NCBI GenBank assembly: GCA_002269645.1
Contig: NIVC01000267.1
Coordinates: 248,001 to 312,000 of the forward strand
Length of the DNA stretch: 64,000 bases
Direction of reading: 5' to 3'
DNA from: Macrostomum lignano
Taxonomy: Eukaryota
Within the stretch, counting starts at the first letter, position 1. Each line of letters opens with the position of its first letter. Below, in pieces: positions 8,601 to 63,639 of the stretch. The position numbers and the translations under genes were made by a program. The notes under the pieces are model-generated. The model had not been told where the DNA came from and searched no databases. It saw nothing but the letters and a program-made list of their open reading frames with translations.

Positions 8601-11600
8601 GAGAGAGCGGAGAGAGCGGATGGAGATCAGAGAGCGGATGGAGATCAGAGAGCGGATGGAGATCAGAGAGCGGATGGAGATCAGAGACTGCATTGAGCAG
8701 GGAGGATGAGGAGCGCCCAGCCCGACTCCCCAGCGTGCATCAGGAAAACTTGCTCGCCTAAATTTTTAATGACGGGTCACGTCATTGGCTTGTCAAGATT
8801 TTAACTATGGAGCGAGCATTGCCAGAGTTGAGTTAAATAAGCGATTGACTGGATGGGGGGGGGGGCTGGAGAAAGTGTGTGGTGGCGACACGAGCAGGCT
8901 GGCTGAGAGGGGAGGAGCCTGGAAAAGCAGGATGAGGCGGGCGGGCGGGCGGTCGGACGCAGGGAAGGCGCGAGAATTTTTCGAGTCGGAATTTTGCCGA
9001 GGCGGCGGCTCTGGGGACAGGATAAGGGGGGGGGGGTAGCAGAGGCCCTTTCTGGGCTCGTGGGCTGACGGAAATCTGAGACGATTTCGCTCTCGCGCGC
9101 TCTCTCTTTATCGAGACTCGCTGAACTGTTCCATCTGGTCAACTGCAGTGTCTCACAGAGCTAGGGACCGGGGGTGTTGGTGTCAAATTTCTTTCAAGGG
9201 AACTGGGAAGGGGGTCTGGAGGCGAAGGCCTGCCCGCCTGCCTGCGCGGCGCGGTGCAAGGAGGAAGCCCCGACTGTCTGTCTTGTGTTCTGGCCCTGCT
9301 AGAGAAGCATGCGTGTGCGATGCGTGTTTCACAGAGAAGTTTTTTCCCCTTAACTTGCTCTTTTTTCTCTGCGTTCTGGCGTGTCTCCTCCTTCTTCTGC
9401 AAGCAGAGAGTGGCAAAAACGGTTCCCAAAGACTGTTGGGCTTGGTGCTGCTTTCAGAGCGAAGTATCGCATCATGATGAAGACGTTCTGGATGAGGCGG
9501 CCCGGTTTTGATAATGAAAAGAAGAAATTTTTAGTCAGTGTGGGTAGGACAACCGGCGCCAGAAAAATTATTAAAAACTGTTTCCAGTGCATAGAATGAC
9601 TCTCTGTTTGTATCTCTAGTCTCCAATCTCTAGTCTCCAATCTCTAGTCTCCAATCTCTAGTCTCCAATCTCTAGTCTCCTATCTCTAGTCTAATATCTC
9701 TAGTCTCCTATCTCTAGTCTCCTATCTCTAGTCTCCTATCTCTAGTCTCCTATCTCTAGTCTTCTATCTGTAGTCTCCTATCTCTAGTCTAATCTCTCTA
9801 GTCTCCTATCTCTAGTCTCCTATCTCTAGTCTCCTATCTCTAGTCTCCTATCTCTAGTCTCCTATCTCTAGTCTCCTATCTCTAGTCTAATCTCTCTAGT
9901 CTCCTATCGCTAGTCTCCTATCTCTAGTCTCCTATCTCTAGTCTCTAGTCCATATCTCTATGCTCTAGTCTCCTATCGCTAGTCTCCTATCTCTAGTCTA
10001 ATCTCTCTAGTCTACTATCGCTAGTCTCCTATCTCTAGTCTCTAGTCCATATCTCTATGCTCTAGTCTTCTATCCCTAGTCTCTAAGAAACGAATGTAAA
10101 ATCTCAATAAATATTTTCAATTTCGCCACTCAGTGCCCCATGGTGCACCCCAAGCCCCTACTAAACAGCCAAATTGGATTGTTTTGGCACAAAGATTCCA
10201 ATTTTTTAACCCGATTGCCAGTCTGGGAGCTCCAACATACGGTCCGGCCCCCCTCTCTCATCTCTCCAAGCAATTAGGCTTCTCAAGTGCGCTCCGGCTT
10301 TGAGAGTGCTCTTCTCTTTTCAACTCCATTTATTTGCTCTCCGCTCCTCCCGGATGCAGTCACAGTGAATGCTGGACTTTTTTGGCAACACGCAGCTCCC
10401 CCTCGCTGTGAGATCAACAGCAACTCACGGCGCTTGACTTGAGCAACTCTGGCCCAGATTGCTGCATATAATGGCTTCTAAGTTGATTCTTGAGCACCCA
10501 GCTCAAACCCCCGGGGGGCAGTTTGGGAATAATGGGAGAGATGCGGCGGAATCAGTGCAACTGTTGCTCAACCACTTTTTTGGAGAGAAGTGTGAAGGGC
10601 CACTTCTATTGCCGCTCATTTCTACCCTTTGGCTAGTAACTGGGATTGTGGGTTTTTATTTCAACTGTGAAAGTCGCTTCATTATTTCGAAGCTCATAGG
10701 TCCGAGCTGGGATTCCAAAATCGGAGCCTTACTGGGGAGAATTGATTTTGACGCAAACGTCTGGCTGACTTTGAGGCACTTGAAAGAAGCAATTGCGGGC
10801 TTATGAGTTAAATGACAAACTGAAGTTAACAATGCCAACAAAAAGCCCCCCCCCCCCCAGTCATTGCGAGGCCCTGCGCGATGCGTTAAAAGTCTTTGTT
10901 TGCCAATAGACTCGGAGAGAGTGGGGGAGCGGCGGCGGCACCCGTTTTTAGGGCTTATGAGATTTGGCAAGGTAATTATTTAAGTTGCGAGGGCCTCCTC
11001 AAAGCTGTTTTGATTTGATGTGCTCAGAACTGGAGGCTCTGCTTTCTCCGTCTCTATTCGTTTGCACAACTCGACTCGAACTTCGAAGCGGCAGGCCATA
11101 GCTAACCCTTAACCCCTGACCGAGCTGTCTTGATTAGCTGCGTTTCACTGTCAATTCTTATCGCACAGGAATCTGTCCTGGTCTGTTTTTGCAGCTGATT
11201 AAAATAAAATCCTTGTTAACGAATTCATATTTTGTATTTTCTGACCCCTGATCCCCGATCCCTGATCCCTGATCCCCTATCCCTGATCCCTGATTCCCGA
11301 TCCCTGATCCCTGATTCCCGATCCCTGATCCCCGATCCCTGATCCCCATTCCCCGATCCCCATTCCCTGATCCCCATTCCCTGATCCCCATTCCCTGATC
11401 CCCATTCCCTGATCCCCATTCCCTGATCCCCATTCCCTGATCCCCATTCCCTGATCCCCATTCCCTGATCCCCATTCCCTGATCCCCATTCCCTGATCCC
11501 CATTCCCTGATCCCCATTCCCTGATCCCCATTCCCTGATCCCCATTCCCTGATCCCCATTCCCTGATCCCCATTCCCTGATCCCCATTCCCTGATCCCCA

Positions 11601-16119: not shown

Positions 16120-27384
<11,265 letters not shown>

Positions 27385-27485: not shown

Positions 27486-30400
27486 AGGGGCGGATACTGC
27501 TGGGGCGGATACTGCTGGGGGCGGATACTGCTGGGGCGGATACTGCTGGGGCGGATACTGCTGGGGCGGATACTGCTGGGGCGGATACTGCTGGGGGCGG
27601 ATACTGCTGGGGCGGATACTGCTGGGGCGGATACTGCTGGGGCGGATACTGCTGGGGGCGGATACTGCTGGGGGCGGATACTGCTTGGGGGCGGATACTG
27701 CTGGGGGCGGATACTGCAGGGGCGGATTCTGGTGGAGGTGGGTTCTGGTGGGGCGGATACTTCTGGGGACCGATACTGCTAGTTGGTGGATACTGCTAGG
27801 GGTGGAGACTGCTAGGGGGTGGATACTGCTAGAGGGTGGATACTGCTGGGGGTGGATACTGCTGGGGGTGGATACTGCTAGAGGGTGGATACTGCTGGGG
27901 GTGGATACTGCTGGGGGTGGATACTGCTGGGGGTGGATACTGCTAGGGGTGGATACTGCTGGGGGCGGATACTGCTGGGGCGGATACTGCTGGGGGCGGA
28001 TACTGCTGGGGCGGATACTGCTGGGGCGGATACTGCTGGGGCGGATACTGCTGGGGGCGGATACTGCTGGGGGCGGATACTGCTTGGGGGCGGATACTGC
28101 TGGGGGCGGATACTGCAGGGGCGGATTCTGGTGGAGGTGGGTTCTGGTGGGGCGGATACTTCTGGGGACCGATACTGCTAGTTGGTGGATACTGCTAGGG
28201 GTGGAGACTGCTAGGGGGTGGATACTGCTAGAGGGTGGATACTGCTGGGGGTGGATACTGCTGGGGGTGGATACTGCTAGAGGGTGGATACTGCTGGGGG
28301 TGGATACTGCTGGGGGTGGATACTGCTGGGGGTGGATACTGCTAGGGGGTGGATACTGCTGGGGGTGGAGACTGCTAGGGGTGGATACTGCTGGGGGTGG
28401 AGACTGCTAGTTGGTGGATACTGCTAGGGGTGGAGACTGCTGGGGGTGGAGACTGCTGGGGGCGGATACTGCTGGGGGCGGATACTGCTTGGGGGCGGAT
28501 ACTGCTGGGGGCGGATACTGCAGGGGCGGATTCTGGTGGAGGTGGGTTCTGGTGGGGCGGATACTGCTGGGGGCGGATACTGCAGGGGCGGATTCTGGTG
28601 GAGGTGGGTTCTGGTGGGGCGGATACTTCTGGGGACCGATACTGCTAGTTGGTGGATACTGCTAGGGGTGGAGACTGCTAGGGGGTGGATACTGCTAGAG
28701 GGTGGATACTGCTGGGGGTGGATACTGCTGGGGGTGGATACTGCTAGAGGGTGGATACTGCTGGGGGTGGATACTGCTGGGGGTGGATACTGCTGGGGGT
28801 GGATACTGCTAGGGGGTGGATACTGCTGGGGGTGGAGACTGCTAGGGGTGGATACTGCTGGGGGTGGAGACTGCTAGTTGGTGGATACTGCTAGGGGTGG
28901 AGACTGCTGGGGGTGGAGACTGCTAGGGGTGGATACTGCTGGGGGTGGATACTTCTGGGGGTGGATACTGCTGGGGGTGGATACTGCTAGAGGTTGGATA
29001 CTGCTGGGGGTGGAGACTGCTAGGGGTGGATACTGCTGGGGGTGGAGACTGCTAGGGGGTGGATACTGCTAGGGGTGGATACTGCTAGGGGGTGGAGACT
29101 GCTAGGGGGTGGATACTGCTGGGGGTGGAGACTGCTGGGGGTGGATACTGCTGGGACAGATACTGCTGGGGGCGGATACTGCTGGGACAGATACTGCTGG
29201 GGGCGGATACTACAGGGGCGGATACTGTTTGGGGGCAGATACTGCTGGGGCTGATACTGTTTGGGGGCGGATACTGCTGGGGGCGGATACTGCTGGGGGC
29301 GGATACTGCAGGGGACAGATACTGCTGGGGCGGATACTGCAGGGACGGATTCTGGTGGAGGTGGGTTCTGGTGGGGCGGATACTGCTGGGGACCGATACT
29401 GCTAGGCCTAGGGGTGGATACTGCTAGGGGTGGATACTGCTAGGGGTGGATACTGCTAGGGGTGGATACTGCTAGGGGTGGATACTGCTAGGGGTGGATA
29501 CTGCTAGGGGTGGATACTGCTGGGGGTGGATACTGCTCATACATGTGCAACCTCCAAAATTCGGTCAGCCGTGCGACTTAGTTTTAACAAAAATGCGACG
29601 TAGTTTTTGGCCAAAAATGCGACTTACATATAAAAAAACCCAAAAGCAAAATTAACACAACTTTGGGTAAACGGCAGGAGTAACTATGACTGTTTTATTA
29701 AGCTAAAATGCCTCGTCAGCTACTTAGTACTACTACTCGGGTTATTTTTTGGGTGGGCATTTTTGCGACTTCCTTGATTGGCCGCCAAATCGGTCGGCCG
29801 GATCGGCCGACTCGGCCGACTGTTGCGCATGTATGATACTGCTAGGGGTGGATACTGCTAGGGGTGGATACTGCTAGGGGTGGATACTGCTAGGGGTGGA
29901 TACTGCTAGGGGGTGGAGACTGCTAGGGGGTGGATACTGCTGGGGGTGGAGACTGCTAGGGGGTGGAGACTGCTGGGGGTGGAGACTGCTGGGGGTGGAG
30001 ACTGCTGGGGTGGATACTGCTGGGACAGATACTGCTGGGGGTGGAGACTGCTGGGGGTGGAGACTGCTAGGGGGTGGAGACTGCTAGGGGGTGGAGACTG
30101 CTGGGGGTGGAGACTGCTGGGGGTGGAGACTGCTGGGGGTGGATACTGCTGGGACAGATACTGCTGGGGGTGGAGACTGCTGGGGGTGGAGACTGCTAGG
30201 GGGTGGAGACTGCTAGGGGGTGGAGACTGCTGGGGGTGGAGACTGCTGGGGGTGGAGACTGATGGGGGCGGATACTGCTGGGACAGATACTGCTGGGGGT
30301 GGAGACTGCTGGGGGTGGAGACTGCTAGGGGTGGAGACTGCTAGGGGGTGGAGACTGCTGGGGTGGAGACTGCTGGGGGTGGAGACTGCTAGGGGGTGGA

Positions 30401-30815
30401 GACTGCTAGGGGTGGATACTGCTGGGGGTGGAGACTGCTAGGGGTGGATACTGCTGGGGGTGGAGACTGCTAGGGGGTGGAGACTGCTAGGGGGTGGAGA
30501 CTGCTGGGGGTGGAGACTGCTGGGGGTGGAGACTGCTGGGGGTGGATACTGCTGGGACAGATACTGCTGGGGGTGGAGACTGCTGGGGTGGAGACTGCTA
30601 GGGGGTGGAGACTGCTAGGGGGTGGATACTGCTGGGACAGATACTGCTGGGGGTGGAGACTGCTGGGGTGGAGACTGCTAGGGGTGGAGACTGCTAGGGG
30701 GTGGAGACTGCTGGGGGTGGAGACTGCTGGGGGTGGAGACTGCTAGGGGGTGGAGACTGCTAGGGGGTGGATACTGCTGGGGGTGGAGACTGCTAGGGGG
30801 TGGATACTGCTGGGG
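27486..30815. repeat. 3.3-kb G-rich 15/16-mer satellite GGATACTGCT(G/A)GGGG(C/T), shifting to GGAGACTGCT distally
   Basis: Tandem array interrupted once by a MITE at 29538-29835. Confidence 0.96.
29538..29835. mobile_element. 298-bp non-autonomous hAT-like MITE
   Basis: 14-bp TIRs CATACATGTGCAAC / GTTGCGCATGTATG (1 mismatch); 8-bp TSD ATACTGCT at 29530-29537 and 29836-29843. Confidence 0.85.
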
Positions 30816-32244
30816 GGCGGTTAGTTCTTAGGGTGGAAAATGCTGGGTAGTTTCGATAACTCTGGGAGAATATTAAAACGCCAAAGAATCGTAGAATGAC
30901 AGAATTTTGATTCCGATATTTGCAAAAATTTTCCAGCTGTGCATTCTGCATCATTGACATTCCTCCTAGGTAACTAGGCAGCTTACAGTGCAATCTATTT
31001 GTTGGATCGATAAAGCAGAACAAGCATTGCCTGTCAAACACTGCATTTACCACCAGACCCAGTCAACCTGGAGAGTCGGCTTAGAGGGGGGGGGGTTGAA
31101 CAATCGACCAACAAATTACTGGAGCAGAAAATTTCGAAACTCTTTTATTGTTCGAGTGAATCAAGCAATGCAACAATTAGATGAGTTTATAGTGGCAACA
31201 GTAAACTCACCGTTCACAGCTGCGGGAGGCTATTGTCTCTGAGTAGCAGCAGCACCGCCTGTCACTTCATCTCTCCCTCTGTCTCACCTGCTCAGAATAT
31301 TCTCAAGTTCTCACGTGGCCAGCCAGTCTCTATAGGCGCGTTCTCAAACTTTGCTAATTAATTTATTAGCTGTGTACCGCGCGCTGGATCAGACGAAAGC
31401 ACTGCAGGCGACCTCTCAGAGAGAAAACTTTAGTCTTAAAAAGGCACAACCAACGGTGACTGACCAACCCGGCGAAGCTGCATGGCGATTGCTTTCCAGA
31501 TACGCGAGCCAATGGCAGGTTGAGCTGGTATTGTGGTTTGAATGGCAGAAATTAAGTATATGCATAGCCTCCTACTATCAAGTAGAGAGTTGAGATCACA
31601 TTAGAGAGAATATTTTGCACTGGAAATATAGCTAGTGTATAGTTAAACGGTACAACAAAACAGTGTAACAGTGTAACAGGTATAACAGAACATGACTAGC
31701 TAGCTATAATACAATAACTGTCTGTTGTACTTTTTCTGAAAAAGCGATAAAAAACTCAAGGGCCTAATTTTCTATTGCAGAATAAAACTCTTGCTTGATC
31801 AGTGGCGCAATTAGGATTTAATCTTTGGGGTGGGATTTTTTTAAGCAAATCAAAATCTAAATCACGAATGACGAATTTATGCGCTTCCACTTATTTAAAA
31901 AGCTTGTTGTACCTGTGTATTATATTTTTTATCACAACTACGAACATAACGCTTGATATCATGCATGGCTTTGTATGTTGTATTCATTATCGCTGAAAAG
32001 TTGTATTCCGGCCGCGGTTAACCCCGACCCCGGCCTTCCCCTCTGCCTACTGCAGCCGCTAGTGGGATTCATCCACGTATCGTCCCTTGCTTACTGGGCA
32101 ACTAGCATTGTTATTAATATTATTATTACCTGTAATCATGTAATCTAGTGCACCTGTATGATTCGTCGGCGCCATCGTTGGTAAGTCAATTGACGCTAGT
32201 AGCTCGTTGAGCTCATCCTGACCGTTGAGAACTGAAACAGCTGG

Positions 32245-51514: not shown

Positions 51515-53039
51515 TATTTGTATTTTAATACAAAAAAATTAAAATTAATAACTCTTTTTTATTCAAAGCATAAAAAGTCTTTCCATTGTTATCAAGCAAT
51601 ATCCTTAGCTTTATCTTTATTTTGTAAAATTCAAACATCTAGCAATTTATTCAAATATTTTAATTTTTTTACCAAAATGTCTTACTAATATCATATGCCT
51701 TATTGCCAAAGTGACTAGTAGCCTTCTAGTATAAATTCAAGTTTGTGATTATAGTTTTTATAAATATAACTATATATTCAATTTTATAATTTTAATATAA
51801 TAATTTAAGAATAAGATTTTTTATAAGTATCAAATTAAGTTCTTGTTATAATAATGTTATGGTATAAGTTATAAGGACATGTTAATAAGCCTTATATTAT
51901 ACTAATAGCTTCATAATTGTATATATGCATTATAGTTGTAAGACCTTATAGCATTGTCTAAACTCATATGCCATTGGCTAATAAACATTTTGGGTTAAGT
52001 TTAAAATATTAAAATAATTTGGTATGTTAGGCATCTTGATATATTTTTTCTAGATTACTTAAAAATTACTTATTAATTAATTGGTATATAATAGATATTA
52101 TCCTTTTTTCCTTTTTCCTTCCTATATTCTAAAAATATGTTGTCAGTATGTGATCAATTAAAAAAACTCAACCAATCTTCTTCAAATTTGCACCATTCAA
52201 TTAGAAATCTTTCCCTGGTGTTAAATGTGTCTTGGCTAAAAAGTTGTTCAATGTTAAAAGGGATTGAATATAAAAAACATGCTTTTTACAAAGGTCAAGT
52301 AGACTTTTCAACTTTAAATGCATTGTAAAAAAGCTAGAGAAAAAACTGACTGGCTGAATTCTTATTCTGATAAAAATTGCATTATACAAGGCTTTTGACT
52401 GTATACTAGCTAAATTTTGACACTGACTTGAATTGTATCAGTGTTGAAAACAGTGTAGGAGTTACCACAAGACTTAATTTAAATTGTATAACTATATAGT
52501 TAACTAATGTATGATAATGACTTGCTATTAATATAATTTAATTTAGCCTTTACTTTTTTTGTCAACCTTTTTTCAATTAGACATTGAGTCATTGAGGCTT
52601 AAATATATATAGTACAAGTTTTCTAGCAATGATTCAATACACTAAATAAAAACTTAAACTATGTATACAAGCCAGACAGTATCCAAAAGCTTATAGACAA
52701 ACATTTTTATGCAAAACAAGCAAACTGTTTGATCAAACCTTGCTATAGTCTTTCATAGTAACACCTATTGTATGCAACCCTGCAAACAAGCAGTAGATGA
52801 TTCCCTCTCCTCACCCCTTTTCTCTCTCCCCTCCCTCTTATTTCCTCTCCTCTCTCATCTCTTTTCTCCTATCTGCTCTCATCTCTTCTCTGATCCTATC
52901 TCTCGCCTCTCCTCTCTGTTATCTCTCATCTATTTTATCGCCTTAATTCCTTTCTCATGTGGCCCGCAGCCATGTACTGAATTATTTATGTATAACTATA
53001 AAAATCTGCTTATTATTTTCGCAGAGCACTTCAACAAGC

Positions 53040-56000
53040 ATGGCAAATGAATGTCTGGCCAGTCTAGGCCTATCTGGGCCTAAGATTGAAGAAACAATGC
53101 GAAACAAAGACCTCACCGAGCGCTTAGTGGCTTTGGTCCGCTGCGCCAAGGACAAGCTGGGCTCCAAGGAGTTGAGTAAAGTGCAGGGAAATTTGATTTA
53201 CCACACTGGCACTAAGCTGAAAAAGCAGGCATTTGCCGGTCATGAACTGATTGTCAACCACATTATTAACGGCGATCTGGCCACGGAGGCCCAGGTAACA
53301 GCCGCCTGCGATTTCTGCCTCAAGCAGATTGGCAGCGGCGACTTGGACGCCTTCAAAGCCGCCTGCGGCATCGGGGTGTCAATCACTCCCGAAGATATCG
53401 AACGGGCGGTTGAGGAAGTGATTAATAAGCATAAGCAGGAGCTGCTGGCACAGCGTTATGCGTTTGGAATGAATAAGCTTCTCGGAGAGGCCAGGTTTGT
53501 GTCCTATAGTTGTCCTATAGGCCCAGGTATAGTTGGATATCTAGCTCAGATCTAGTTGGATATCTAGCTCGGATCTAGTTGGATATCTAGCTCGGGTCTA
53601 GTTGGATATCTAGCTCGGATCTATTTGGATATCTAGCCAAGACATGTTTAAAGCCAATCCTGTCCCAAGCAATCCTACCCACCTTTACCCCGCTATCAAA
53701 GATCCAACCTGAAATGGGCCGACGGCAAGCAGGTGAAATGCGAATTCGAGGTGCAAATCCTTCACTTGCTGGGCCCCAAGACCGACGCTGACCGAGCCGG
53801 CAATGCCAACGCCTCTTCAGTTGCTAAGCAACCGGCTGCCAGAGGCAAGCCAGCGGCAGTCGCAGCCGCCGCCAACGGGAACGCGGAGGTCTTCCGCGAA
53901 GACACCCGCTCCCTGGCCGACCAGATGATCAGCGGCGACGCGGCCAAATTTCACAAGCCGGGCGAAAATTACCTCACTGACGGCTACGTGATGACGCCGC
54001 GGACTCGATTCCTGCTCGGGCGGCACCTCAAGCAGACTGGCGGCAAGGTATTCACCAGATTCCCTCCCGAGCCCAACGGAATTCTCCATATCGGGCACGC
54101 TAAAGCCATCAATTTTAACTTCGGCTACGCGCGAGCTCACAACGGGCACTGCTATCTCAGGTGCGCTGATTGCTAGAAGCCCCTGAACCCTACCCATAAT
54201 CGCCCCTGAACGTTATCTAGAGTCGCCCTGAACCCTATCCAGAGTCGCCCTGAACCCTATCCAAGTCGCCCTGAACCCTAACCAGAATCGCCCTGAACCC
54301 TATCCATAATCGCCCCTGAACCCTATCCATAATCGCCCTGAACCCTATCCATAATCGCCCTGAACCCTATCCATAATCGCCCCTGAACCCTATCCAGAAT
54401 CCGCTTATGCTTTATTAAAATTTCAGATACGACGACACGAATCCGGAGAAAGAGGAGGAGAAATTCTTTGTAGCCATTCGTGACATTGTGGAGTGGCTCG
54501 GCTACACGCCTTATAAGGTTGGTGGAATTTTATTAGCCAGTTGTGACTACTGTCTTGTCACTCCGATCCCTAATTTACTGTTCTTGTCACTCCGGGTCTT
54601 AAATTCACTGTTCTCGTCACTCCGATGCCGATTTAAACTTTTCTGGTCACCCCGGTTCACCAAATTCACTGCTCTCGTCACTGGGGGCACCAAATTCACT
54701 GTTCTCGTCACTTTGGGGCCACCAAATTCACTGCTCTCGTCACTCCGATGCCGAATTAAACTTTTCTGGTCACTCGGGTTCACCAAATTCACTGTTCTCG
54801 TCACTTTGGGGCCACCAAATTCACTGCTCTCGTCACTTTGGGGCCACCAAATTCACTGCTCTCGTCACTCCAACGCCCAACTCCAAGCCCACACACCCCT
54901 TCCATCAACCAGGTGACGTACGCGTCGGACAACTTCGACCAGCTGTACGAGTGGGCTGAGAGCCTCATCATGCGCGGCAAGGCCTACGTGTGCCATCAGT
55001 CGCCAGACCAGTTGAAGGGCCACAACCCGCCGCCGTCGCCTTGGCGAGATCGGCCAGCCGAGGAGTCGCTGCAGCTGTTCAGAGCGATGCGGGCCGGCAT
55101 GTACGCCGAGGGCGAGGCCTGTCTGAGAATGCGGCTCACTATGGAGGACTCCAAGCAGGATCCCGTGGCTTACAGGATCAAATATGCCCGGCACCACCGG
55201 ACTGGCAGCAAGTGGTGCATCTATCCCACCTATGACTACACCCACTGCTTGTGCGACTCCATTGAGAACATTACTCACTCTCTGTGCACCAAGGTGAGCC
55301 TTTGGCGGCGTTTGGGGCCATTGCCCCCTCCATGCTATTGTCCCCTCCATGCTATTGCCCCCTCCATGCTATTGTCCCCCTCCATGCTATTGCCCCTCCA
55401 TGCTATTGCCCTCCATGCTATTGTCCCCTCCATGCTATTGCCCCCCCCATGCTGTTGCCCCCTCCATGCTATTGCCCCACTCCATGCTATTGCCCCCTCC
55501 ATGCTATTGCCCCCTGTTTGATGTCCTCTCTGATCCTTCAGGTGTCTGATGCCCCTCCATGATCCTTCATGTGTCTAATGTCCCCCTCCATACTTCTTCA
55601 TGTCCTAGTGTCCCCTCCATCATCCTTCAGCTGTCTGACGCCCCCTCCATCATCCTTCAGCTGTCTGACGCCCCCTCCATGATCCCTCATCTGGCTGCAG
55701 TTATCTTATTATAAACCGCATAGCAACCGCGCAAGCAAATCTCATCCCCCATCTGTGAACAACAATCGCAGGAGTTCCAGAACCGCCGGTCCTCCTATTA
55801 CTGGCTGTGCAACGCGCTGGACCTGTACTGCCCGGTGCAGTGGGAGTACGGCCGGCTCAACGTCTGCAACACGGTCATGTCCAAGCGGAAGATTCTCAAC
55901 CTGGTGCAGAAGAAGGCTGTAGCTGACTGGGACGATCCCAGGCTATTCACCCTCACAGCGCTGCGCCGCCGCGGTGTCCCGCCAGAAGCTGTGAACCTAT

Positions 56001-57412
56001 TCGCCGCCAAGGTTGGCGTCACCATGGCATCGGCCTACATCGATCCCAGCCTCCTTGACGCCTGCACCAGAGAGATCCTTAACACATCAGCGCCGCGCAC
56101 CATGGTTGTACTCGATCCGCTGAAGGTCACCATAGTTGAAGGCCTGGACGCCGTCAAATCGGCCGCCTTGACGGTGCCAGACTATCCGGCCAGTCCAGAG
56201 CGGGGCTCGCATTCCATTGCCAGCTTCTCCGCCTCATCCGGCGTGCTCTACTTAGAGAGAGAAGATTTTCGCGACGGCGGCAAAGCGGGCGCCGGCGCCG
56301 GGTTCAAACGGCTCACCGAGGACCAGCCAGTCGGCCTAAAGCACGCCAATGTGGCCATCGCTGTGCGTCAGGTTGTCCGGGACGCTGCCGGACAGGTGTC
56401 CGAGCTCCGAGTGGCCTGTCTGCCGTTGGACAGCCTGCCGGCCAAGCCGAAATGCTTTGTGCATTGGGTGGCGGATCCTGTGCAGGTGAGAGCGGGAATC
56501 GGGCCTAATTGCGAATAAAGATGATAAAATCCGCTTGCTACTTATTTAGTAGCAAGCAAAGAAAGTGAAAACTATTTTCGTAGTGTTGGTCCAATATAAT
56601 GATAATAATAATAGCAATTTTTAACACCCTGTCCCAATTGGGCCAGTTGTGCAACCGAAAGCTCAGCCGCAGCTATTGCACGGCGCATCTTTAAAGGCTG
56701 CATACGGCCACACTCACCCTCAATTACCCCAGCTAATGCTGGCACCCATTTTACAGCTGCGTGAACTGAAGCAATGCAGAGTTGAGTGTCTTGCTCAAGG
56801 ACACAAACTGTTCCAGTGGGATCGGGAATCGAACCCCCAACCTTCAAGTCGTCAGCCCGACGCTCCAACCACTAGGCTAACAACTCTGAAGAAAGAACAA
56901 CCCCCTTTCTTGCGGCAAGAGAAAAATTGAAATAAATGTCTGCTGTGGGCTTTAAAGTGCAAATTTACGGCCCAAGAGTCGTTTCATAGTCACAGACAAT
57001 AAAAGGCTTCAAATTGACTTTTAGGCTACTTTTTGGCGACTTGTACCGTGACATCGCGTCGTGTTTTAGAGTCGTCCAGAGTCACTTCTTTTCTTTTTTA
57101 CCTGGGTTACCTGCAACGACTCTGTCTGTCACACAATATCCAATCCAGGTGGAGGTCCGCTTATACGAGCAGCTGTTCACCATGAAGAACCCCGAGGAGC
57201 ATCCCGACGGCCTCATAGCGGCCATGAATCCGAACTCTCTGTCGGTGAAGCCCGGCGCCCTGGCTGATCGCTACCTGCTGACTGCTGCCGCCATTCAGCG
57301 CCACCTGCAGTTCGAGCGGCTGGGCTATTTTTATCTGGATCAGGACTCCAGCCCGCCTGGCCGGCTTATCTTTAATCGAACTGTCACGCTGAAAGAAGAC
57401 GTTGGGAAATAA
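53040..57412 (+). CDS. QARS1: Glutaminyl-tRNA synthetase, join(53040..53494,53702..54160,54427..54517,54913..55293,55772..56485,57149..57412), ~787 aa
   Basis: Eukaryotic N-terminal appended domain (LASLGLS...LKWADGK); HIGH motif [16 protein letters not shown]; YDDTNPE; IYPTYDY..C.CDSIE.ITHSLCT.EF; MSKRK; [14 protein letters not shown]; QFERLGYF; [10 protein letters not shown]. All five introns are GT-AG and in phase; total 2364 nt. Confidence 0.97.
53529..53637. repeat. 23-mer AGTTGGATATCTAGCTCGGATCT x~5 (QARS intron 1)
   Basis: Read directly. Confidence 0.88.
54178..54400. repeat. ~22-23-mer CGCCCCTGAACCCTATCCATAAT (QARS intron 2)
   Basis: Read directly. Confidence 0.9.
54550..54870. repeat. 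Degenerate ~30-32-mer CCAAATTCACTGCTCTCGTCACTTTGGGGCCA (QARS intron 3)
   Basis: Read directly. Confidence 0.85.
55318..55700. repeat. 17-18-mer TGCTATTGCCCCCTCCA followed by a ~30-mer variant array (QARS intron 4)
   Basis: Read directly. Confidence 0.88.
56595..56885 (-). mobile_element. tRNA-headed CORE-type SINE in QARS intron 5
   Basis: Minus strand: box A TAGCCTAGTGG, box B GGTTCGATTCC, then GTGTCCTTGAGCAAGACACT...GCTTCAGT...CTGTAAAATGGG resembling the MIR CORE domain, and a (TTA)n-like tail. Confidence 0.7.
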
Positions 57413-57850: not shown

Positions 57851-58287
57851 CGGTAATTCTAAGACAGTCAAATCGCTAATTGGACCATTCTTTTTCTACC
57901 AGCATCAGCTCACTCGAGTCAAAAAAATAAACAGAATTGTGTAACTGTAAACTGCTTAAACGTATTCAATCAATTTTCACAACAGTAATCTTGTTGCTTT
58001 TAGAAGCGACGTGGATTACTTGTGCCATGTATTCGAGGAAAAATTTATTGTGATCGCTAAAATCCCGTGAATGTTAGATTGATATTTGCGGTTGAATGAT
58101 TTTTTTGGTTGCTAATTTATGACTAACTTAGTAATTTTAAATGGCAAGTACACCAGTTCAGAATCGATAGTTAAGAGTCGCTTCCTTTAACAGTTTGCTC
58201 CTTTTGGATTGATGCGGTGCCTCTCGCTTCGTGTCCTTATTTCAAAACATTTTTGTAATAACTAATGCAACTTAGCAATAGCAACTT

Positions 58288-58415
58288 AGGGGAAGCTGTG
58301 TGTTTCTAAGAATTGCAATAGGGGAAGTTGTGTGTTCTAAGAATTGCAATAGGGGAAGCTGTGTGTTTCTAAGAATTGCTGTGGTTGAAGCTGTGTGTTT
58401 CTAAGAATTGCTGTA
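58288..58415. repeat. ~32-mer GGGGAAGCTGTGTGTTTCTAAGAATTGCAATA x~4
   Basis: In the spacer between QARS and the TUT-like gene. Confidence 0.8.
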
Positions 58416-58592
58416 GGCATAATTCTCTTAATAGTGCAATTAAAAGAATTTGTGGATTTAAGAAGCTTTGCCTTTTAACAATAGTGAATAGAGAGAATAT
58501 TAGGAACTTAGACTAGGGGAAGTGCTCCCATTTAAAAATCAGTATGTTTTCTCCTTCCTCATTTTCTAAGAAAGCCTCGCAGCCCACCAGCC

Positions 58593-61500
58593 ATGAGCAC
58601 TGAGTACATGTCCAACCGCAGCCTGGGCGAGCAGCTGCAGGCGTTTTATAACTGCATTCTGCTGTCGGCTGAGGAGGCCGCCCAGCGACAGCTGGCCATC
58701 GACCGACTCACCGAGCTGGTGTCGGAGACCCTGCCCAAGGCCACGGTGCACCTGGTCGGCTCCTCGGCCAGCGGCATCGCCTCCAAGAATTCCAGTGTGG
58801 ATCTCTCCATTGAGGTGAGGCTTCTGTCCTTAGCTTTGCGAGTTCTTGCACGCGGTGTCGCACTTTTAAGCATGTTTATTTGGGATGTTATCTCCCAGAT
58901 CCCTAGTTGCTGGGCCAGCCTCCCAGATCCTCAGTTGCTGGGCCAGCCTCCCGGATCCTCAGTTGCTGAGTCGCCACCAGGCTCCCAGATCCTCAAGTTC
59001 AGCCACCCAGATCCTCAAGTTCAGCCACCCAGATCCTCAAGTTCAGCCTCCCAGATCCTCAAGTTCAGCCTCACAGATCCTCAAGTTCAGCCTCCCAGAT
59101 CCTCAAGTTCAGCCTCACAGATCCTCAAGTTCAGCCTCCCAGATCCTCAAGTTCAGCCTCCCAGATCCTCAAGTTCAGCCTCCCAGATCCTCAAGTTCAG
59201 CCTCCCAGATCCTCAAGTTCAGCCTCCCAGATCCTCAAGTTCAGCCTCACAGATCCTCAAGTTCAGCCTCCCAGATCCTCAAGTTCAGCCTCCCAGATCC
59301 TCAAGTTCAGCCTCACAGATCCTCAAGTTCAGCCTCCCAGATCCTCAAGTTCAGCCTCCCAGATCCTCAAGTTCAGCCTCCCAGATCCTCAAGTTCAGCC
59401 TCCCAGATCCTCAAGTTCAGCCTCACAGATCCTCAAGTTCAGCCTCACAGATCCTCAAGTTCAGCCTCACAGATCCTCAAGTTCAGCCTCACAGGTCCCG
59501 CACAGACGAACCAGCTACCAAACTCAATGCTCCGCTCCCCCTCTTCCCCCCCCCCGCAGATCCCGGATGACAATCCAACGGGTGCCAATGCGCCCACCGC
59601 AGCGGAAGCCGCTCCGCAGGCCGACGCGGCCAGCCGCGACCGCGAGCGGGCGGACCAAATCTTTGGCTTGCTGCAGCGTCGCGAAGGCGAATTCATCCGC
59701 GTCCAGGTGATGCACAGTCGGCAGGTGTCGGTGGTCACCTGCGTGTACCGGCAGGCTGACCTGCGCTGCTCCGTCAGGCTTGGCAGAGGCGGCCAGCAGC
59801 ATAGGCGAGCCGCGGCCCTGTTAAACGGCCTGGCCTCGCTCAGCGAAGCTTTTCGCCTGCTGACCGTTGTAACGAGAGAGTGGGCGCTGTCCAGGCAGCT
59901 TATTAGGCGGAAGGGAGCGCTGACCGGCTACGCTGTGGCCCTGCTGGTGCTGTTTCACATGGAGCAGGGTGAGTGTGCGGCCTTGATAACCCACTCATTG
60001 ACCCACTGTATAATTGACCTAATAAATCATTGACCTACTGACTCATTGACCCACTCTTGACCCACTTTAATTGACCCACTCTTGACCCACTGTATAATTG
60101 ACCCACTGAATCATTGACCTATTGAATCATTGACCTACTGACTCATTGACCAACTCTTGACCCACTATAATTGACCCACTCTTGACCCACTGTATAATTG
60201 ACCCACTAAATCATTGACCTACCAAATCATTGACCCATTGAATCATTGACCTATTGAATCATTGACCTACTGATTCATTGATCCACTCTTGACCCACTGT
60301 ATAATTGACCCACTGAATCATTGACCTATTGAATCATTGACTCACTACTAAGTCATTGACCCACTGAATCATCGACCCACTGTATAATTGACCCACTGAA
60401 TCATTGACCCACTGAATCATTGACCTACTGACTCATTGACCCACTCTTGACCCACTGTATAATTGACCCACTGAATCATTGACCTATTGAATCATTGACT
60501 CACTACTAAGTCATTGACCCACTGAATCATCGACCCACTGTATAATTGATCCACTGAATCATTGACCCACTGAATTATTGACCCACTGAATTATTGACCC
60601 ACTGAATTATTGACCCACTGACTCACTGCCACTTTGTTTATTCACATCAACACATGTCCTCTCTGCCGCAGGCGGCCTGGTACCGCCGTCCGTAGTTCGC
60701 GCCCTGGCCCGAGGCCATCGCAAATCCGAGGTGTCCGAGGCGTTGCGCAAATGGCAGCCGGAGCCGCTGAGCACAGAGCAGCTGGGTGAGCAGTTCTGCG
60801 GCCTGGTCCGCCTGTACGCCACCATCGGCTTCTTCGCCTCCAGCGCCGTCTGCGTCCTCACCGGCCGCCTGCTGGACCGGGGCGGCCGCGAGGATCCGTT
60901 TCCCGGCGCCCGGGTCAGCCTGCCCTGTCCGGTGTCCGGAGAGAATGCTGGCCGAACCTATTCACGGGTGTCCGAACCGGAGGAGCCCTTCTATCGGACG
61001 GCGCTTAACTTGGCCAAGGACCACGATTTGTTCACGGCCTGCTTCGCTCGCAACCTGGACGGGATGCGCAAGGCTAAATTGGTGCAGCAGCTGCCCGCTT
61101 TCAAGTGAGCCCTTGCTGTTTTCCTGTCTGTAACAGTCTCTTGAGTTGCTGTTATTTTGTCTGTAACAGCCTCTTGAGTTGCTGTTTTCCTGTCTGTAAC
61201 AGTCTCTTGAGTTGCTGTTATTTTGTCTGTAACAGCCTCTTGAGTTGCTGTTTTCCTGTCTGTAACAGTCTCTTGAGTTGCTGTTATTTTGTCTGTAACA
61301 GCCTCTTGAGTTGCTGTTTTCCTGTCTGTAACAGTCTCTTGAGTTGCTGCTATTTTGTCTGTAACAGCCTCTTGAGTTGCTGTTATCCTGTCTTTCTGTA
61401 ACAGCCTCTTGAGTTGCTGTTATTTTGTCTGTAACAGCCTCTTGAGTTGCTGTTATCCTGTCTGTCTGTAACAGCCTCTTGAGTTGCTGTTATCCTGTCT

Positions 61501-63161
61501 GTCTGTAACAGCCTCTTGAGTTGCTGTTATCCTGTCTGTCTGTAACAGCCTCTTGAGTTGCTGTTATCCTGTCTGTCTGTAACAGCCTCTTGAGTTGCTG
61601 TTTTCCTGTCTGTAACAGTCTCTTGAGTTGCTGTTATTTTGTCTGTAACAGTCTCTTGAGTTGCTGTTATTTTGTCTGTAACAGCCTCTTGAGTTGCTGT
61701 TATCCTGTCTGTCTGTAACAGCCTCTTGAGTTGCTGTTATCCTGTCTGTAACAGCCTCTTGAGTTGCTGTTATCCTGTCTGTAACAACCTCTTGAGTTGC
61801 TGTTATCTTGTCTGTAACAGCCTCATGAGTTGCTGTTTTCCTGTCTGTAACAGTTTATGCCTTGGTTGGCGATTCATTTAACGTTGGCTCTCCCCTCCTC
61901 CGCCAGGCGCCTGGAAGAGCAGCAGCTGGTGCCGCCCATGCAGCGCCTGGTCGAGCGAGTCCAGCGCACCCTGGAGAATCGCGGCCGCTCCGGCTACGAG
62001 AAATTCGCCGGCCGACTGGTCGCGACCTCCGCCAACGGCGCCGACGCTGCCGCTCCTAGTAAGTCGTCGCCTCCGCAGCGGCAGCAGCATCAGTTCCAGA
62101 ATCCGCATCATCAGCAGTACCGCCAGCGACCGCAGGTTCCGCGTTTTCGTGCCTCCTCGTCGCCGAAGTTCCCAACGGCTCCCGGGCCGCAGCAGCAGCA
62201 GCAGCCGATGTCAATGCTGCGGCAGATTCCTCGCCCGCCGCGGCCTCTGCTGAGGCTGCCGCGCAGTTGCAGCGGCAATGGCGGCAGCGGCCGTGGCAGG
62301 TCGGCGGCGTCAAAGTCTGCCGAACGACCAGCGTCGGCTCAGACGAAGGCGCCGAAGGCAAAACGCGACAACAATTCGAAAAAATCTATGAAAAAAGCTA
62401 AAAGCGCTTCTAAAAAGCCTCAAGCCGCCGCCAAGAAGCCTGAAGCTTCAGACGAATCCGCCGCCAAGAAGCCTGAAGCTTCAGACGAATCCGCCGCTAA
62501 GAAGCCTGAAGCTTCAGGCGAATCTGCCGCTAAGAAGCCTGAAGCTTCAGGCGAATCTGCCGCTAAGAAGCCTGAAGCTTCAGACGAATCTGCCGCTAAG
62601 AAGCCTGAAGCTTCAGGCGAATCTGCCGCTAAGAAGCCTGAAGCTTCAGGCGAATCCGCCGCTAAGAAGCCTGAAGCTTTAGGTGAATCTGCCGCCAAGA
62701 AGCCTGAAGCTTCAGGCAAATCCGCCGCCAAGAAGCCTGAAGCTTCAGGCAAATCCGCCGCCAAGAAGCCTGAAGCTTTAGGTGAATCCGCCGCCAAGAA
62801 GCCTGAAGCTTTAGGTGAATCTGCCGCCAAGAAGCCTGAAGCTAATTCAGGCGAGTCCGTCGTTAAGAAGCCTGAAGCTGCAGAGTTGGAGAATTCAGCT
62901 TCGGAAGCGCGCGCAATTTCAAATCGCGCCACTTTCGCCGCTGTAGCCGCCAACAAGCTGGCCGACCCGACAAAGTCCGCGTCCGCCTCTGGCAACCTGC
63001 TTGACCGTCGGCCGCTGACGGTGAACAATCGGGCTGCTGACGCCCCACCGCTGCCGGCTTCGTCCAAGTCGCTGCCGACGCCGCAGCAGCAGCAGCAGCG
63101 GCAGGCCGGAGCTCCGTCAGGCCGCTCTTATGCTGGCGCCGTGACCGGCCAGGGTCGCTAG
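58593..63161 (+). CDS. Cid1/TUT/GLD-2-family nucleotidyltransferase-fold protein, predicted catalytically inactive, join(58593..58814,59560..59968,60672..61104,61907..63161), ~772 aa
   Basis: Pol-beta-like motif VHLVGSSASGIASKNSSVDL; helical segment FRLLTVVTREWA...GALTGYAVALLVLFHMEQ; PAP-associated-like LGEQFCGLVRLYA...CPVSGENAGR; low-complexity tail. Introns are GT-AG with phases 0/1/2 all matched; total 2319 nt. Confidence 0.78.
58895..59492. repeat. 22-mer CAGATCCTCAAGTTCAGCCTCC (TUT-like intron 1)
   Basis: About 25 copies. Confidence 0.95.
59985..60630. repeat. Degenerate ~16-mer ATTGACCCACTGAATC (TUT-like intron 2)
   Basis: Read directly. Confidence 0.9.
61110..61853. repeat. 33/37-mer CTGTAACAGCCTCTTGAGTTGCTGTTATCCTGT (TUT-like intron 3)
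   Basis: Starts immediately after the donor. Confidence 0.95.
62424..62880 (+). repeat. Coding 33-bp minisatellite encoding (AAKKPEASGES) x13
   Basis: In frame within the last exon of the TUT-like gene. Confidence 0.92.
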
Positions 63162-63230: not shown

Positions 63231-63236
63231 AATAAA
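63231..63236 (+). terminator. Candidate poly(A) signal for the TUT-like gene
   Basis: Overlapping AATAAA hexamers 70 nt after the stop. Confidence 0.5.
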
Positions 63237-63639
63237 TAAATAAATAACTTTAGTATCATGCACTACAATGCATTAAAAATGATTTTATTAACTTGGCGCT
63301 TTGCATTTTTATGTACTTTAATAACCAATTTTCTACATTTATAATCTATAGTTATCTCCCGGTTATAATAATATTATAGGTCAGGTATTTTTGTTAATTA
63401 ACCTTTTTCTACTACTGTTAATGATTTACATTTACAAAGCATTTGTTTAATATCAGCTTGACTTCAATTTATTAAAATTTTGAAATTTCACGACGCTTTT
63501 GTATGCGCAACTTTTTCACTGGTGCTGCATTCCTGGATTTCAGGCAGTTTTGAACCGTTTTATTTGTGAAGCGTCACTTGGGCATCATCCCCTGTGCTGG
63601 CTGCTTTCTGACTGACTGATTTGTGTTGTCCTCTCCTCT

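What the first reader, a model, noticed from the sequence alone, without database searches (positions are those of the whole stretch)
58593..61104. Stand-alone pseudo-TUTase: Cid1/GLD-2 fold lacking two of three catalytic aspartates
Seen: the signature hGS-x9-12-SDhD reads GSSASGIASKNSSVDL (codon AGT where the first Asp is expected), and the third-Asp strand (usually CDI) reads DLRCSV. The downstream N-x-x-LL motif is also absent, yet the ORF, splice phases and PAP-associated region are intact over ~772 aa. Established: Pol-beta-family tailing enzymes need three carboxylates, and an inactive copy is known as the N-terminal module of TUT4/7, where it is fused to an active domain. Here no active domain or zinc knuckle is evident. 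Inference: a catalytically dead RNA-binding or scaffold paralogue, possibly a regulator or partner of an active tailing enzyme. This is the best candidate for an undescribed component in the window.
Basis: partly seen in the sequence, partly recalled or inferred. Interest (0 to 1): 0.72.

Follow-up and report, generated by a model that had tools for sequence, protein, structure and literature searches.

The report
Flatworm tailing-enzyme look-alike without catalytic residues
A four-exon gene of the flatworm Macrostomum lignano encodes a protein with the fold of an RNA-tailing enzyme (Cid1/GLD-2 type) that has lost two of its three metal-binding aspartates, so it is most likely a non-catalytic "pseudo-enzyme", a known kind of protein and of modest interest.

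Summary
A GT-AG four-exon gene (58593-63161, + strand) encodes 772 aa. A near-identical GenBank copy (PAA64307.1, "hypothetical protein", Macrostomum lignano) uses the same exon junctions.

Residues 12-145 match Pfam MTPAP-like_central above its cut-off. A model of the first ~260 aa matches GLD-2, Cid1, TUT7, TUT1, MEAT1 and mtPAP structures.

In an alignment with 47 related domains, the catalytic triad positions read Ser68, Asp70, Ser145. Each Ser codon is at least two base changes from Asp.

The only relative outside M. lignano is one transcript-like contig of unknown species (36% identity). It keeps both Asp of the DxD motif but also lacks the third Asp. It shares other active-site changes with the window protein: Arg147, Leu184 for the W-A-K lysine, and Gly197. 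Inactivation therefore seems old and stepwise, while other blocks stay strongly conserved.

The window holds no second transferase domain and no zinc knuckle. The C-terminal 412 aa are a basic, repetitive tail.

Most likely this is a maintained, catalytically dead stand-alone tailing-enzyme homologue that acts by binding. Its actual role is untested. I rate it a new member of a known kind (pseudo-nucleotidyltransferases).

The parts
58547..58570 (+). Polypyrimidine tract ending in AG, 22 nt upstream of the ATG. Candidate 3' splice (possibly spliced-leader trans-splice) acceptor.
   Evidence: Read directly from the sequence. Trans-splicing is frequent in M. lignano (PMC5730564). Its function here is inferred, not shown.
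58593..58814 (+). Exon 1 (codons 1-74): N-terminal helices, the hG-S motif (G56 S57, 58758-58763), Ser68 in place of the first Asp (AGT, 58794-58796), and the retained second Asp70 (GAT, 58800-58802).
   Evidence: tblastn of relative P0003 residues 5-76 maps to 58596-58811.
58815..59559 (+). Intron 1 (GT..AG), filled almost entirely by a 22-bp tandem array (58978-59498, about 24 copies).
59560..59968 (+). Exon 2 (codons 75-211, phase 1 at its 3' end): a disordered insert, strands beta3-5 with Ser131 (usually Pro), Ser145 in place of the third Asp (TCC, 59770-59772), Arg147 (59776-59778), Leu184 for the W-A-K lysine, and the conserved block REWALSRQLIRRKGALTGY.
59969..60671 (+). Intron 2 (GT..AG), filled by a 16-bp-based tandem array (59995-60625, about 41 copies).
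60672..61104 (+). Exon 3 (codons 211-355): the degenerate PAP-associated/central-domain region (LGEQFCGLVRLYA...; VSLPCPVSGENAGR in place of the 'IEDPF....N.AR' motif) and the family-specific conserved block YSRVSEPEEPF...TACF.
61105..61906 (+). Intron 3 (GT..AG), filled by a 33-bp tandem array (61113-61853, about 22 copies). If the intron were retained, the reading frame would meet a TGA at 61106-61108.
61907..63161 (+). Exon 4 (codons 355-772 plus stop): basic low-complexity tail (pI about 10.3), including 13 copies of the 11-aa unit AAKKPEASGES, encoded by a 33-bp repeat at 62425-62883.
63231..63244 (+). Two AATAAA polyadenylation-signal hexamers about 70 nt after the stop codon.

Best explanation
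This is a transcribed, intact gene of Macrostomum lignano. It encodes a stand-alone homologue of the non-canonical poly(A)/poly(U) polymerases (TENT, Cid1/GLD-2 fold) that can no longer transfer nucleotides.

Only one of the three metal-binding carboxylates is left (Asp70). Ser68 and Ser145 replace the other two. Arg147 points from the same strand face into the former metal site. Several NTP-contacting positions are also changed: the Lys of W-A-K is Leu184, Asn-Thr is Ala-Ala, Ser-Ser-Tyr is Thr-Gly-Tyr, and the Asp of E-D-P is Cys296.

The protein therefore most likely works by binding rather than by catalysis. The folded ~355-aa domain would serve as a protein- or RNA-docking module. Its best-conserved surfaces are residues 177-210 and 301-335. 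The 412-aa lysine-rich disordered tail would supply unspecific RNA or polyanion affinity.

Shown: the gene structure, the fold family, the residue substitutions, their partial sharing with a distant relative, and the absence of a fused active domain. Inferred: loss of activity, and the adaptor or decoy role.
For: Gene model and transcription:
- The four-exon model is intact.
- The same junctions are used by GenBank PAA64307.1 / BOX15_Mlig004094g2. That annotation derives from an RNA-seq-guided transcriptome (PMC5730564).

Fold:
- Pfam PF22600, E 7.9e-12.
- Sequence hits in the PDB to TUT4/7, TUT1, GLD-2, Cid1 and URT1.
- The AlphaFold model has pLDDT 70-90 over residues 8-262. It matches GLD-2, MEAT1, Cid1, TUT7, TUT1 and mtPAP with Foldseek probability 1.0 and E about 1e-11 to 1e-9.
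- The profile of the protein plus P0003 aligns to GLD-2 over residues 10-311, 64.7 bits.

Catalytic positions:
- Position 68 is Asp in 43/47 relatives, Ser here.
- Position 145 is Asp in 36/47, Ser here.
- Position 147 is never Arg in relatives, Arg here.
- Position 184 is Lys or Arg in 35/47, Leu here.
- The Ser codons AGT and TCC are at least two changes from GAY. Ser68 and Ser145 also occur in the second genomic copy, so this is not a sequencing error.

The carboxylates are needed:
- Double Asp-to-Ala ('DADA') mutants are the standard dead control (10.1101/422972).
- TUT4 NTD1, which lacks two carboxylates, is inactive (PMC6488673).

Long-term maintenance:
- P0003 matches at E 1.8e-53 with 36% identity.
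- It shares the loss of the third Asp, plus Arg147, Leu184, Gly197 and Glu209, but keeps the DxD motif.
- Conservation is patchy: 16/20 identical at residues 181-200 and 25/40 at 301-340.
- P0003 also carries a long Lys-rich tail.
- The two proteins are monophyletic in 100/100 NJ bootstraps.
Against: - No activity, expression level, localisation or partner was measured.
- Only one relative outside the species was found, and its species is unknown. No dN/dS could be computed.
- The two M. lignano copies are too similar to show selection: 2 differences in the domain, and p=0.23 against the non-repeat tail.
- The structure model rests on 5 sequences. It is unreliable beyond residue 262, and its coordinates could not be inspected. 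So it was not possible to check whether another acidic residue (Glu74, Asp77/78, Asp141) reaches the metal site.
- Some 'pseudoenzymes' have turned out to be active with relocated residues (PMC10211241 abstract).
Confidence: 0.55

Rival explanations
1. Decaying or functionless duplicate. The gene is a relic of a tailing enzyme in a recently duplicated, repeat-rich genome. It is transcribed, but no selection acts on its product.
For: M. lignano is a neopolyploid with large duplicated blocks (PMC5730564; PMC10733133 abstract). The family is nearly orphan, with only one cluster outside the species among 1.84 billion representatives. The tail varies in repeat number between copies, with 49 gap columns. 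Catalytic and NTP-binding residues are eroding one after another.
Against: A 772-codon frame is intact across four exons with canonical splice sites, in at least two copies. At 36% overall identity to P0003, blocks of 80% identity persist, and the domain-plus-basic-tail architecture is kept. Neutral decay over that distance would have destroyed the frame and the blocks. The two differences between the M. lignano copies in the domain both lie in the disordered insert.
Confidence: 0.2
2. Nucleotide-binding sensor. The cleft no longer catalyses transfer but still binds an NTP or NDP as a ligand that regulates the protein. This has been described for NF45, and (from my own knowledge) for MiD51.
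For: Gly56-Ser57, Asp70, Tyr198 and several basic residues near the phosphate site (Arg186, Arg190, Arg191, Lys192) are retained and shared with P0003. NF45 binds ATP/UTP/CTP without catalysis (PMC3467086).
Against: The W-A-K lysine, the Asn-Thr pair and the second Ser of S-S-Y are all replaced. In active enzymes these positions lie around the nucleotide. Arg147 probably occupies part of the site. In TUT4 NTD1 the equivalent pocket is closed (PMC6488673).
Confidence: 0.12
3. Still an active transferase with an unconventional active site. Other acidic residues (for example Glu74, Asp77/78 or Asp141), or a single-metal mechanism, would substitute for the missing carboxylates.
For: Asp70 and the hG-S motif are kept. 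Asp141 is conserved between the two family members. There is precedent for 'migrated' catalytic residues in supposed pseudoenzymes (PMC10211241 abstract).
Against: Two of three carboxylates and at least four further nucleotide-contacting positions are changed at once. Asp141 sits four residues before the catalytic position, in the hairpin turn between strands 131-137 and 142-148 of the model. That column is variable, mostly Gly, in active relatives. Arg147 on the catalytic strand face would disfavour Mg2+. The D-to-A double mutant is dead in every tested member.
Confidence: 0.07

Closest known systems
GLD-2 / TENT2 cytoplasmic poly(A) polymerases (e.g. PDB 6lbj, 6lbk, 5jnb)
   Same: GLD-2 is the best per-domain sequence-profile match: 64.7 bits, aligned over residues 10-311 including the central/PAP-associated part. 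It is also the top Foldseek match, E 1.2e-11. Both are a single NTase-plus-central domain without an RNA-binding domain of their own. GLD-2 depends on partner proteins for RNA recruitment (PMC7988573).
   Different: GLD-2 has all three Asp, the W-A-K Lys, Asn-Thr and S-S-Y. This protein has Ser68, Ser145, Arg147, Leu184, Ala158-Ala159 and Gly197. It also carries a 412-aa basic repeat tail. Identity is only about 20%, and the NJ tree does not resolve a sister group.
N-terminal inactive nucleotidyltransferase domain (NTD1, Lin28-interacting module) of TUT4/TUT7
   Same: It has the same fold, also lacks two of the three carboxylates, and is used for binding rather than catalysis (PMC6488673). With the single sequence it is the best whole-protein PDB hit, TUT4 at 1.5e-8.
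   Different: The residues lost are different: TUT4 has Asp-x-Asn...Arg, whereas this protein has Ser-x-Asp...Ser. TUT4/7 NTD1 is fused to a C2H2 finger, an active domain and CCHC knuckles, and none of these is present here. Its per-domain profile score is lower than that of GLD-2, 29.9 against 64.7 bits. The two are not sister groups in the tree.
DZF-domain 'pseudotransferases' NF45/NF90 (ILF2/ILF3), Zfr, SPNR
   Same: These are template-free nucleotidyltransferase folds that lost their catalytic residues and act through dimerisation and RNA binding. NF45 is essentially a stand-alone domain (PMC3467086). They set the functional precedent for a stand-alone dead transferase.
   Different: No sequence relationship was detected: there is no DZF Pfam hit at E<=10, and NF45/NF90 are not among the PDB sequence hits. 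DZF proteins are conserved across animals, whereas this family was found in only two sources.
Cid1 / TUT7 catalytic module / TUT1 / MEAT1 / mtPAP (active TENTs)
   Same: They share the overall palm-plus-fingers architecture: Foldseek probability 1.0 and TM about 0.5 normalised to the 393-aa query, of which about 260 aa are modelled confidently. They also share the hG-S motif, the second Asp, and the Tyr of S-S-Y.
   Different: All are active enzymes with the full triad. The uridine-selective His position is Glu in this protein and Thr in P0003.

Membership tests
TENT / Cid1-GLD-2 non-canonical nucleotidyltransferases (Pol beta superfamily) | Palm domain with the helix-turn hG[GS] motif and five-stranded sheet | tested here: met
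   PF22600 at 45.9 bits, above the cut-off of 27. G56-S57 are invariant in the alignment. The model has strands at 51-55, 69-74, 119-126, 131-137 and 142-148. Foldseek gives probability 1.0 to GLD-2, Cid1 and TUT7.
TENT / Cid1-GLD-2 non-canonical nucleotidyltransferases (Pol beta superfamily) | Catalytic triad [DE]h[DE]...[DE] | tested here: not met
   Ser68, Asp70 and Ser145 stand against Asp in 43/47, 42/47 and 36/47 related domains. The protein is therefore a homologue by descent, but not a member in the enzymatic sense.
TENT / Cid1-GLD-2 non-canonical nucleotidyltransferases (Pol beta superfamily) | PAP-associated / central domain following the palm | tested here: inconclusive
   There is no PF03828 hit at E<=10, and the AlphaFold confidence is below 50 after residue 262. 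However, the profile aligns to GLD-2 through residue 311, and the LG.L..F..FY and DP....N.[AG]R motifs are alignable.
TENT / Cid1-GLD-2 non-canonical nucleotidyltransferases (Pol beta superfamily) | Template-independent nucleotide addition to RNA 3' ends | not testable with these tools
   This needs a biochemical or tethering assay.
TUT4/7 N-terminal inactive module (LIM) | Asp-x-Asn...Arg substitution pattern, and fusion to a C2H2 finger, an active C-terminal module and CCHC knuckles | tested here: not met
   The substitution pattern is different (PMC6488673). There is no second domain in the window and no CCHC or C2H2 pattern. The N-terminus coincides with that of P0003. A stop codon plus AATAAA signals end the gene.
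DZF-domain pseudotransferases (NF45/NF90) | Sequence match to the DZF domain | tested here: not met
   There is no DZF family among the Pfam hits at E<=10, and no NF45/NF90 chains among the PDB sequence hits.
Pseudoenzyme (general definition: enzyme fold lacking conserved catalytic motifs, maintained by selection) | Fold retained, catalytic motif lost, sequence otherwise conserved between species | tested here: inconclusive
   Fold and motif loss are shown. Conservation is shown against a single relative of unknown species. No dN/dS and no functional data are available.

The most novel reading that the evidence does not exclude
A macrostomid-specific family of stand-alone dead tailing-enzyme homologues, in which the former active site was rebuilt into a new binding site. 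The rebuilding includes a conserved Arg147 on the catalytic strand, Leu for the phosphate-binding Lys, and Glu209 for the near-invariant Gln. With its lysine-rich tail, the protein would act as a decoy or adaptor that competes for the RNA-binding partners of an active GLD-2-type polymerase and so tunes cytoplasmic tailing. It may be co-transcribed with glutaminyl-tRNA synthetase as the second gene of a trans-spliced unit.
Probability: 0.15. Interest if true: 0.5.

Novelty: new member of a known kind. Interest (0 to 1): 0.3.

Why it matters
If the protein is functional, it would be a natural example of a Cid1/GLD-2-type enzyme turned into a stand-alone non-catalytic factor. An intermediate stage seems preserved in a relative that keeps DxD but has lost the third Asp. 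Such cases help to separate the scaffolding roles of tailing enzymes from their catalytic roles. M. lignano allows RNAi and transgenesis, so the question is testable. Pseudoenzymes are common in most enzyme families, however, and nothing here changes how tailing is understood. The practical value is mainly a better annotation than 'hypothetical protein'.

Tried and rejected
- **Word-indexed protein search, window protein as query.** It gave only M. lignano entries. P0002 and P0068 first looked like 56-80% paralogues. They are frame-shifted mispredictions of the same gene from an older assembly, and parts of them match alternative reading frames of exons 2-3.
- **Same tool, P0003 as query.** It found nothing.
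- **Same tool, 29-sequence profile as query.** It returned only 5 proteins, so no deep alignment could be built for structure prediction.
- **The look-up of encoding contigs.** P0001 and P0002 are not on record. No DNA of other copies or of P0003 was therefore available, and no dN/dS could be computed.
- **Two M. lignano copies as a test of constraint.** The test was uninformative.
- **NJ tree to assign a TENT subfamily.** The pair is monophyletic 100/100, but its sister group is unresolved.
- **Literature.** Searches for the locus tag and for Macrostomum plus nucleotidyltransferase found nothing.
- **Freed TUT4/7 N-terminal module.** Considered and rejected: the substitution pattern is different, the per-domain score is lower than for GLD-2, and the two are not sister groups.
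- **Sequencing or assembly error as the cause of the Ser codons.** Rejected: each needs at least 2 base changes, and a second copy agrees.
Full report
**What is in the sequence**

The region 58593-63161 on the + strand holds a four-exon gene. The exons are 58593-58814, 59560-59968, 60672-61104 and 61907-63161. Every intron has GT..AG ends, and the joined frame is open for 772 codons with GC3 of 0.70.

Each of the three introns is almost entirely one tandem array. The units are a 22-mer with ~24 copies, a 16-mer-based unit with ~41 copies, and a 33-mer with ~22 copies.

About 70 nt after the stop lie two AATAAA hexamers. A pyrimidine tract ending in AG lies 22 nt before the ATG.

**Organism and annotation**

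The only close database matches are from the flatworm Macrostomum lignano. The 90% cluster contains GenBank PAA64307.1, "hypothetical protein BOX15_Mlig004094g2, partial", 727 aa.

This protein is a second, 93%-identical copy. The differences are mostly repeat-number changes in the tail. It uses exactly the exon junctions of my model and keeps both Ser68 and Ser145.

That annotation set was built from an RNA-seq-guided transcriptome assembly (PMC5730564). The splicing pattern therefore has transcript support, though for the sister copy rather than this exact locus.

Two UniRef entries first looked like 56-80% paralogues (P0002, P0068). They are frame-shifted mispredictions of the same gene.

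**Fold**

- Residues 12-145 match Pfam MTPAP-like_central (PF22600) at E 7.9e-12, above the curated cut-off. The TUTase and NTP_transf_2 families match below their cut-offs.
- Sequence search of the PDB finds TUT4/TUT7 (N-terminal domain), TUT1, GLD-2, Cid1 and URT1.
- An AlphaFold2 model from a shallow 5-sequence alignment is confident (pLDDT mostly 70-90) for residues 8-262. It is poor after that.
- Foldseek matches the model to GLD-2, MEAT1, Cid1, TUT7, TUT1, mtPAP and the TUT4 Lin28-interacting module. All have probability 1.0 and E of 1e-11 to 1e-9.
- A profile of the protein plus its one distant relative aligns to mammalian GLD-2 over residues 10-311 at 64.7 bits. The TUT7 N-terminal domain scores 29.9 bits.

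The C-terminal 'PAP-associated' half is thus present but degenerate. Pfam PF03828 does not detect it.

**Catalytic residues**

I aligned the domain with P0003 and 47 domains taken from the hits of the exhaustive search.

| Position in this protein | 47 related domains | This protein | P0003 |
|---|---|---|---|
| 56-57 (hG-S) | Gly 47/47, Ser 46/47 | Gly-Ser | Gly-Ser |
| 68 (first carboxylate) | Asp 43/47 | Ser | Asp |
| 70 (second carboxylate) | Asp 42/47 | Asp | Asp |
| 145 (third carboxylate) | Asp 36/47 | Ser | Thr |
| 147 (two residues on, same strand face) | small residue 40/47, never Arg | Arg | Arg |
| 184 (Lys of W-A-K) | Lys/Arg 35/47 | Leu | Leu |
| 158-159 (Asn-Thr) | Asn 24/47; Thr or Ser 37/47 | Ala-Ala | Ile-Ala |
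| 197 (second Ser of S-S-Y) | Ser 31/47 | Gly | Gly |
| 131 (Pro of V-P-I-V-K) | Pro 45/47 | Ser | Cys |
| 209 (Gln of L-Q) | Gln 45/47 | Glu | Glu |
| 296 (Asp of E-D-P) | Asp 40/47 | Cys | Asp |

Codon 68 is AGT and codon 145 is TCC. Each is at least two substitutions from an Asp codon.

Double Asp-to-Ala mutants of the first two carboxylates are the standard dead control for this family (10.1101/422972). The TUT4 N-terminal domain, which also lacks two carboxylates, is structurally confirmed as inactive (PMC6488673). The inference that this protein cannot catalyse nucleotidyl transfer is therefore strong, but it is not measured.

**The one relative and what it says about history**

An exhaustive HMMER scan of 1.84 billion representatives found only three matches below 1e-10. 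Two of these are M. lignano entries. The third, P0003, is the only one from outside the species: 866 aa, E 1.8e-53, 36% identity over residues 4-357. It comes from a single 2.8-kb Logan contig of unknown species.

Features of P0003:
- Its tblastn matches break exactly at the exon borders of my model.
- Its N-terminus coincides with the ATG at 58593.
- It also carries a long Lys-rich tail.
- It keeps both Asp of the DxD motif.
- It shares the loss of the third Asp, and shares Arg147, Leu184, Gly197 and Glu209.

The simplest reading is that the active site was already disabled in the common ancestor. The first Asp and the E-D-P Asp were then lost later on the M. lignano line.

Meanwhile other blocks stay highly conserved. 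REWAL.R.LIRRKGALTGY is 16/20 identical. NAGR.YSR.S.PEEPF...TACF is 25/40 identical. That pattern argues for continued selection on something other than catalysis.

The two proteins group together in 100/100 neighbour-joining bootstraps. Their sister group among TENTs is unresolved.

**Stand-alone status**

- tblastn with this protein, with P0003, with a two-domain TUT4/7-like protein and with a Cid1-like protein finds no other transferase domain in the 64 kb.
- The protein has no CCHC or C2H2 pattern.
- The upstream gene (~52959-57412, + strand) is a glutaminyl-tRNA synthetase with its own AATAAA at the stop.
- The suffix 'g2' in the GenBank locus tag denotes the second gene of a transcriptional unit in that annotation scheme (PMC5730564). 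Co-transcription with the synthetase, followed by trans-splicing, is therefore possible but only inferred.

**Tail**

Residues 361-772 are low-complexity (Ala 19%, Ser 13%, Lys 11%, Pro 10%) with a pI of about 10.3. They include 13 tandem copies of AAKKPEASGES. Copy number differs between the two genomic copies.

**Interpretation**

The best-supported explanation is a maintained, catalytically dead, stand-alone TENT homologue that acts by binding. The folded domain would serve as a docking module and the basic tail as an unspecific RNA or polyanion binder. I give this about 0.55.

Rivals:
- A functionless decaying gene, about 0.2. The intact frame and the conserved blocks at 36% identity argue against it.
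- A nucleotide-binding but non-catalytic sensor in the manner of NF45, about 0.12.
- A still-active enzyme with an unconventional site, about 0.07.

The specific idea of a regulator or partner of an active tailing enzyme is plausible by analogy. GLD-2 depends on partner proteins (PMC7988573). NF45/NF90 are 'pseudotransferases' that work through dimerisation (PMC3467086). The idea is untested here.

**Comparison with known systems and novelty**

The protein is a homologue of Cid1/GLD-2-type enzymes but fails their defining catalytic feature.

It is not a TUT4/7 N-terminal module. The substitutions differ, there are no fused domains, and it is not a sister group.

It is not a DZF protein either, since there is no sequence match.

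Pseudo-nucleotidyltransferases, including stand-alone ones, are already known. I therefore rate it a new member of a known kind, restricted so far to two sources, and of modest interest (0.3).

No literature on it was found.

Noticed in passing
window 58815-59559, 59969-60671, 61105-61906: Each of the three introns of the gene consists almost wholly of one tandem array, and each has a different unit: a 22-mer with about 24 copies, a 16-mer-based unit with about 41 copies, and a 33-mer with about 22 copies. Intron 1 is even open in the exon-1 reading frame.
   Followed up: partly
window 1-57500: The whole window is dense in long tandem arrays. Examples are TCTG x268 at 313-1383, a 9-mer x287 at 5844-8604, a 23-mer x65 at 20776-22262 and a 16-mer x206 at 27487-30816. 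Many long 'ORFs' in the mechanical list are artefacts of these arrays. This fits the repeat-rich M. lignano genome (PMC5730564).
   Followed up: partly
window 52959-57412 (+): Exons of a glutaminyl-tRNA synthetase (class I HIGH motif '[12 protein letters not shown]', C-terminal '[10 protein letters not shown]'), with AATAAA at 57408 overlapping its stop. It lies 1.2 kb upstream on the same strand. The GenBank tag '...g2' of the sister copy suggests that the two genes may belong to one trans-spliced transcriptional unit.
   Followed up: partly
window 2627-3397 (+): An exon encoding a SIX-class homeobox protein (SIX1_SD domain at E 2.3e-44, plus a homeodomain).
   Followed up: no
window 16863-18345 (-): Two overlapping ORFs with matches to the APCDD1 domain (PF14921, E 8e-14 and 5e-11). 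They are probably exons of an APCDD1-like gene interrupted by a 15-bp repeat array.
   Followed up: no
window 61105-61108: The donor of intron 3 is CAA|GTGAGC. If the intron were retained, the frame would read AAG TGA at once, giving a 355-aa protein that is the folded domain without the basic tail. Whether this isoform exists is unknown.
   Followed up: no
window 58287-58411: A 32-bp unit (TAGGGGAAGCTGTGTGTTTCTAAGAATTGCAA) is repeated about 3.9 times, 180-300 bp upstream of the start codon. Its function is unknown.
   Followed up: no
database entries P0001, P0002, P0068 (UniRef A0A1I8I3K2, A0A1I8JR07, A0A1I8F3Y2): The UniRef names attached to fragments of this gene ('Pex2_Pex12', 'ELM2', 'DUF4149 domain-containing protein') have no support in the sequences. 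Two of the entries are frame-shifted predictions from the older assembly.
   Followed up: partly
window 62420-63067 (-): A 215-aa antisense ORF lies across the coding 33-bp repeat of exon 4. It is a by-product of the repeat, not evidence of a gene.
   Followed up: no
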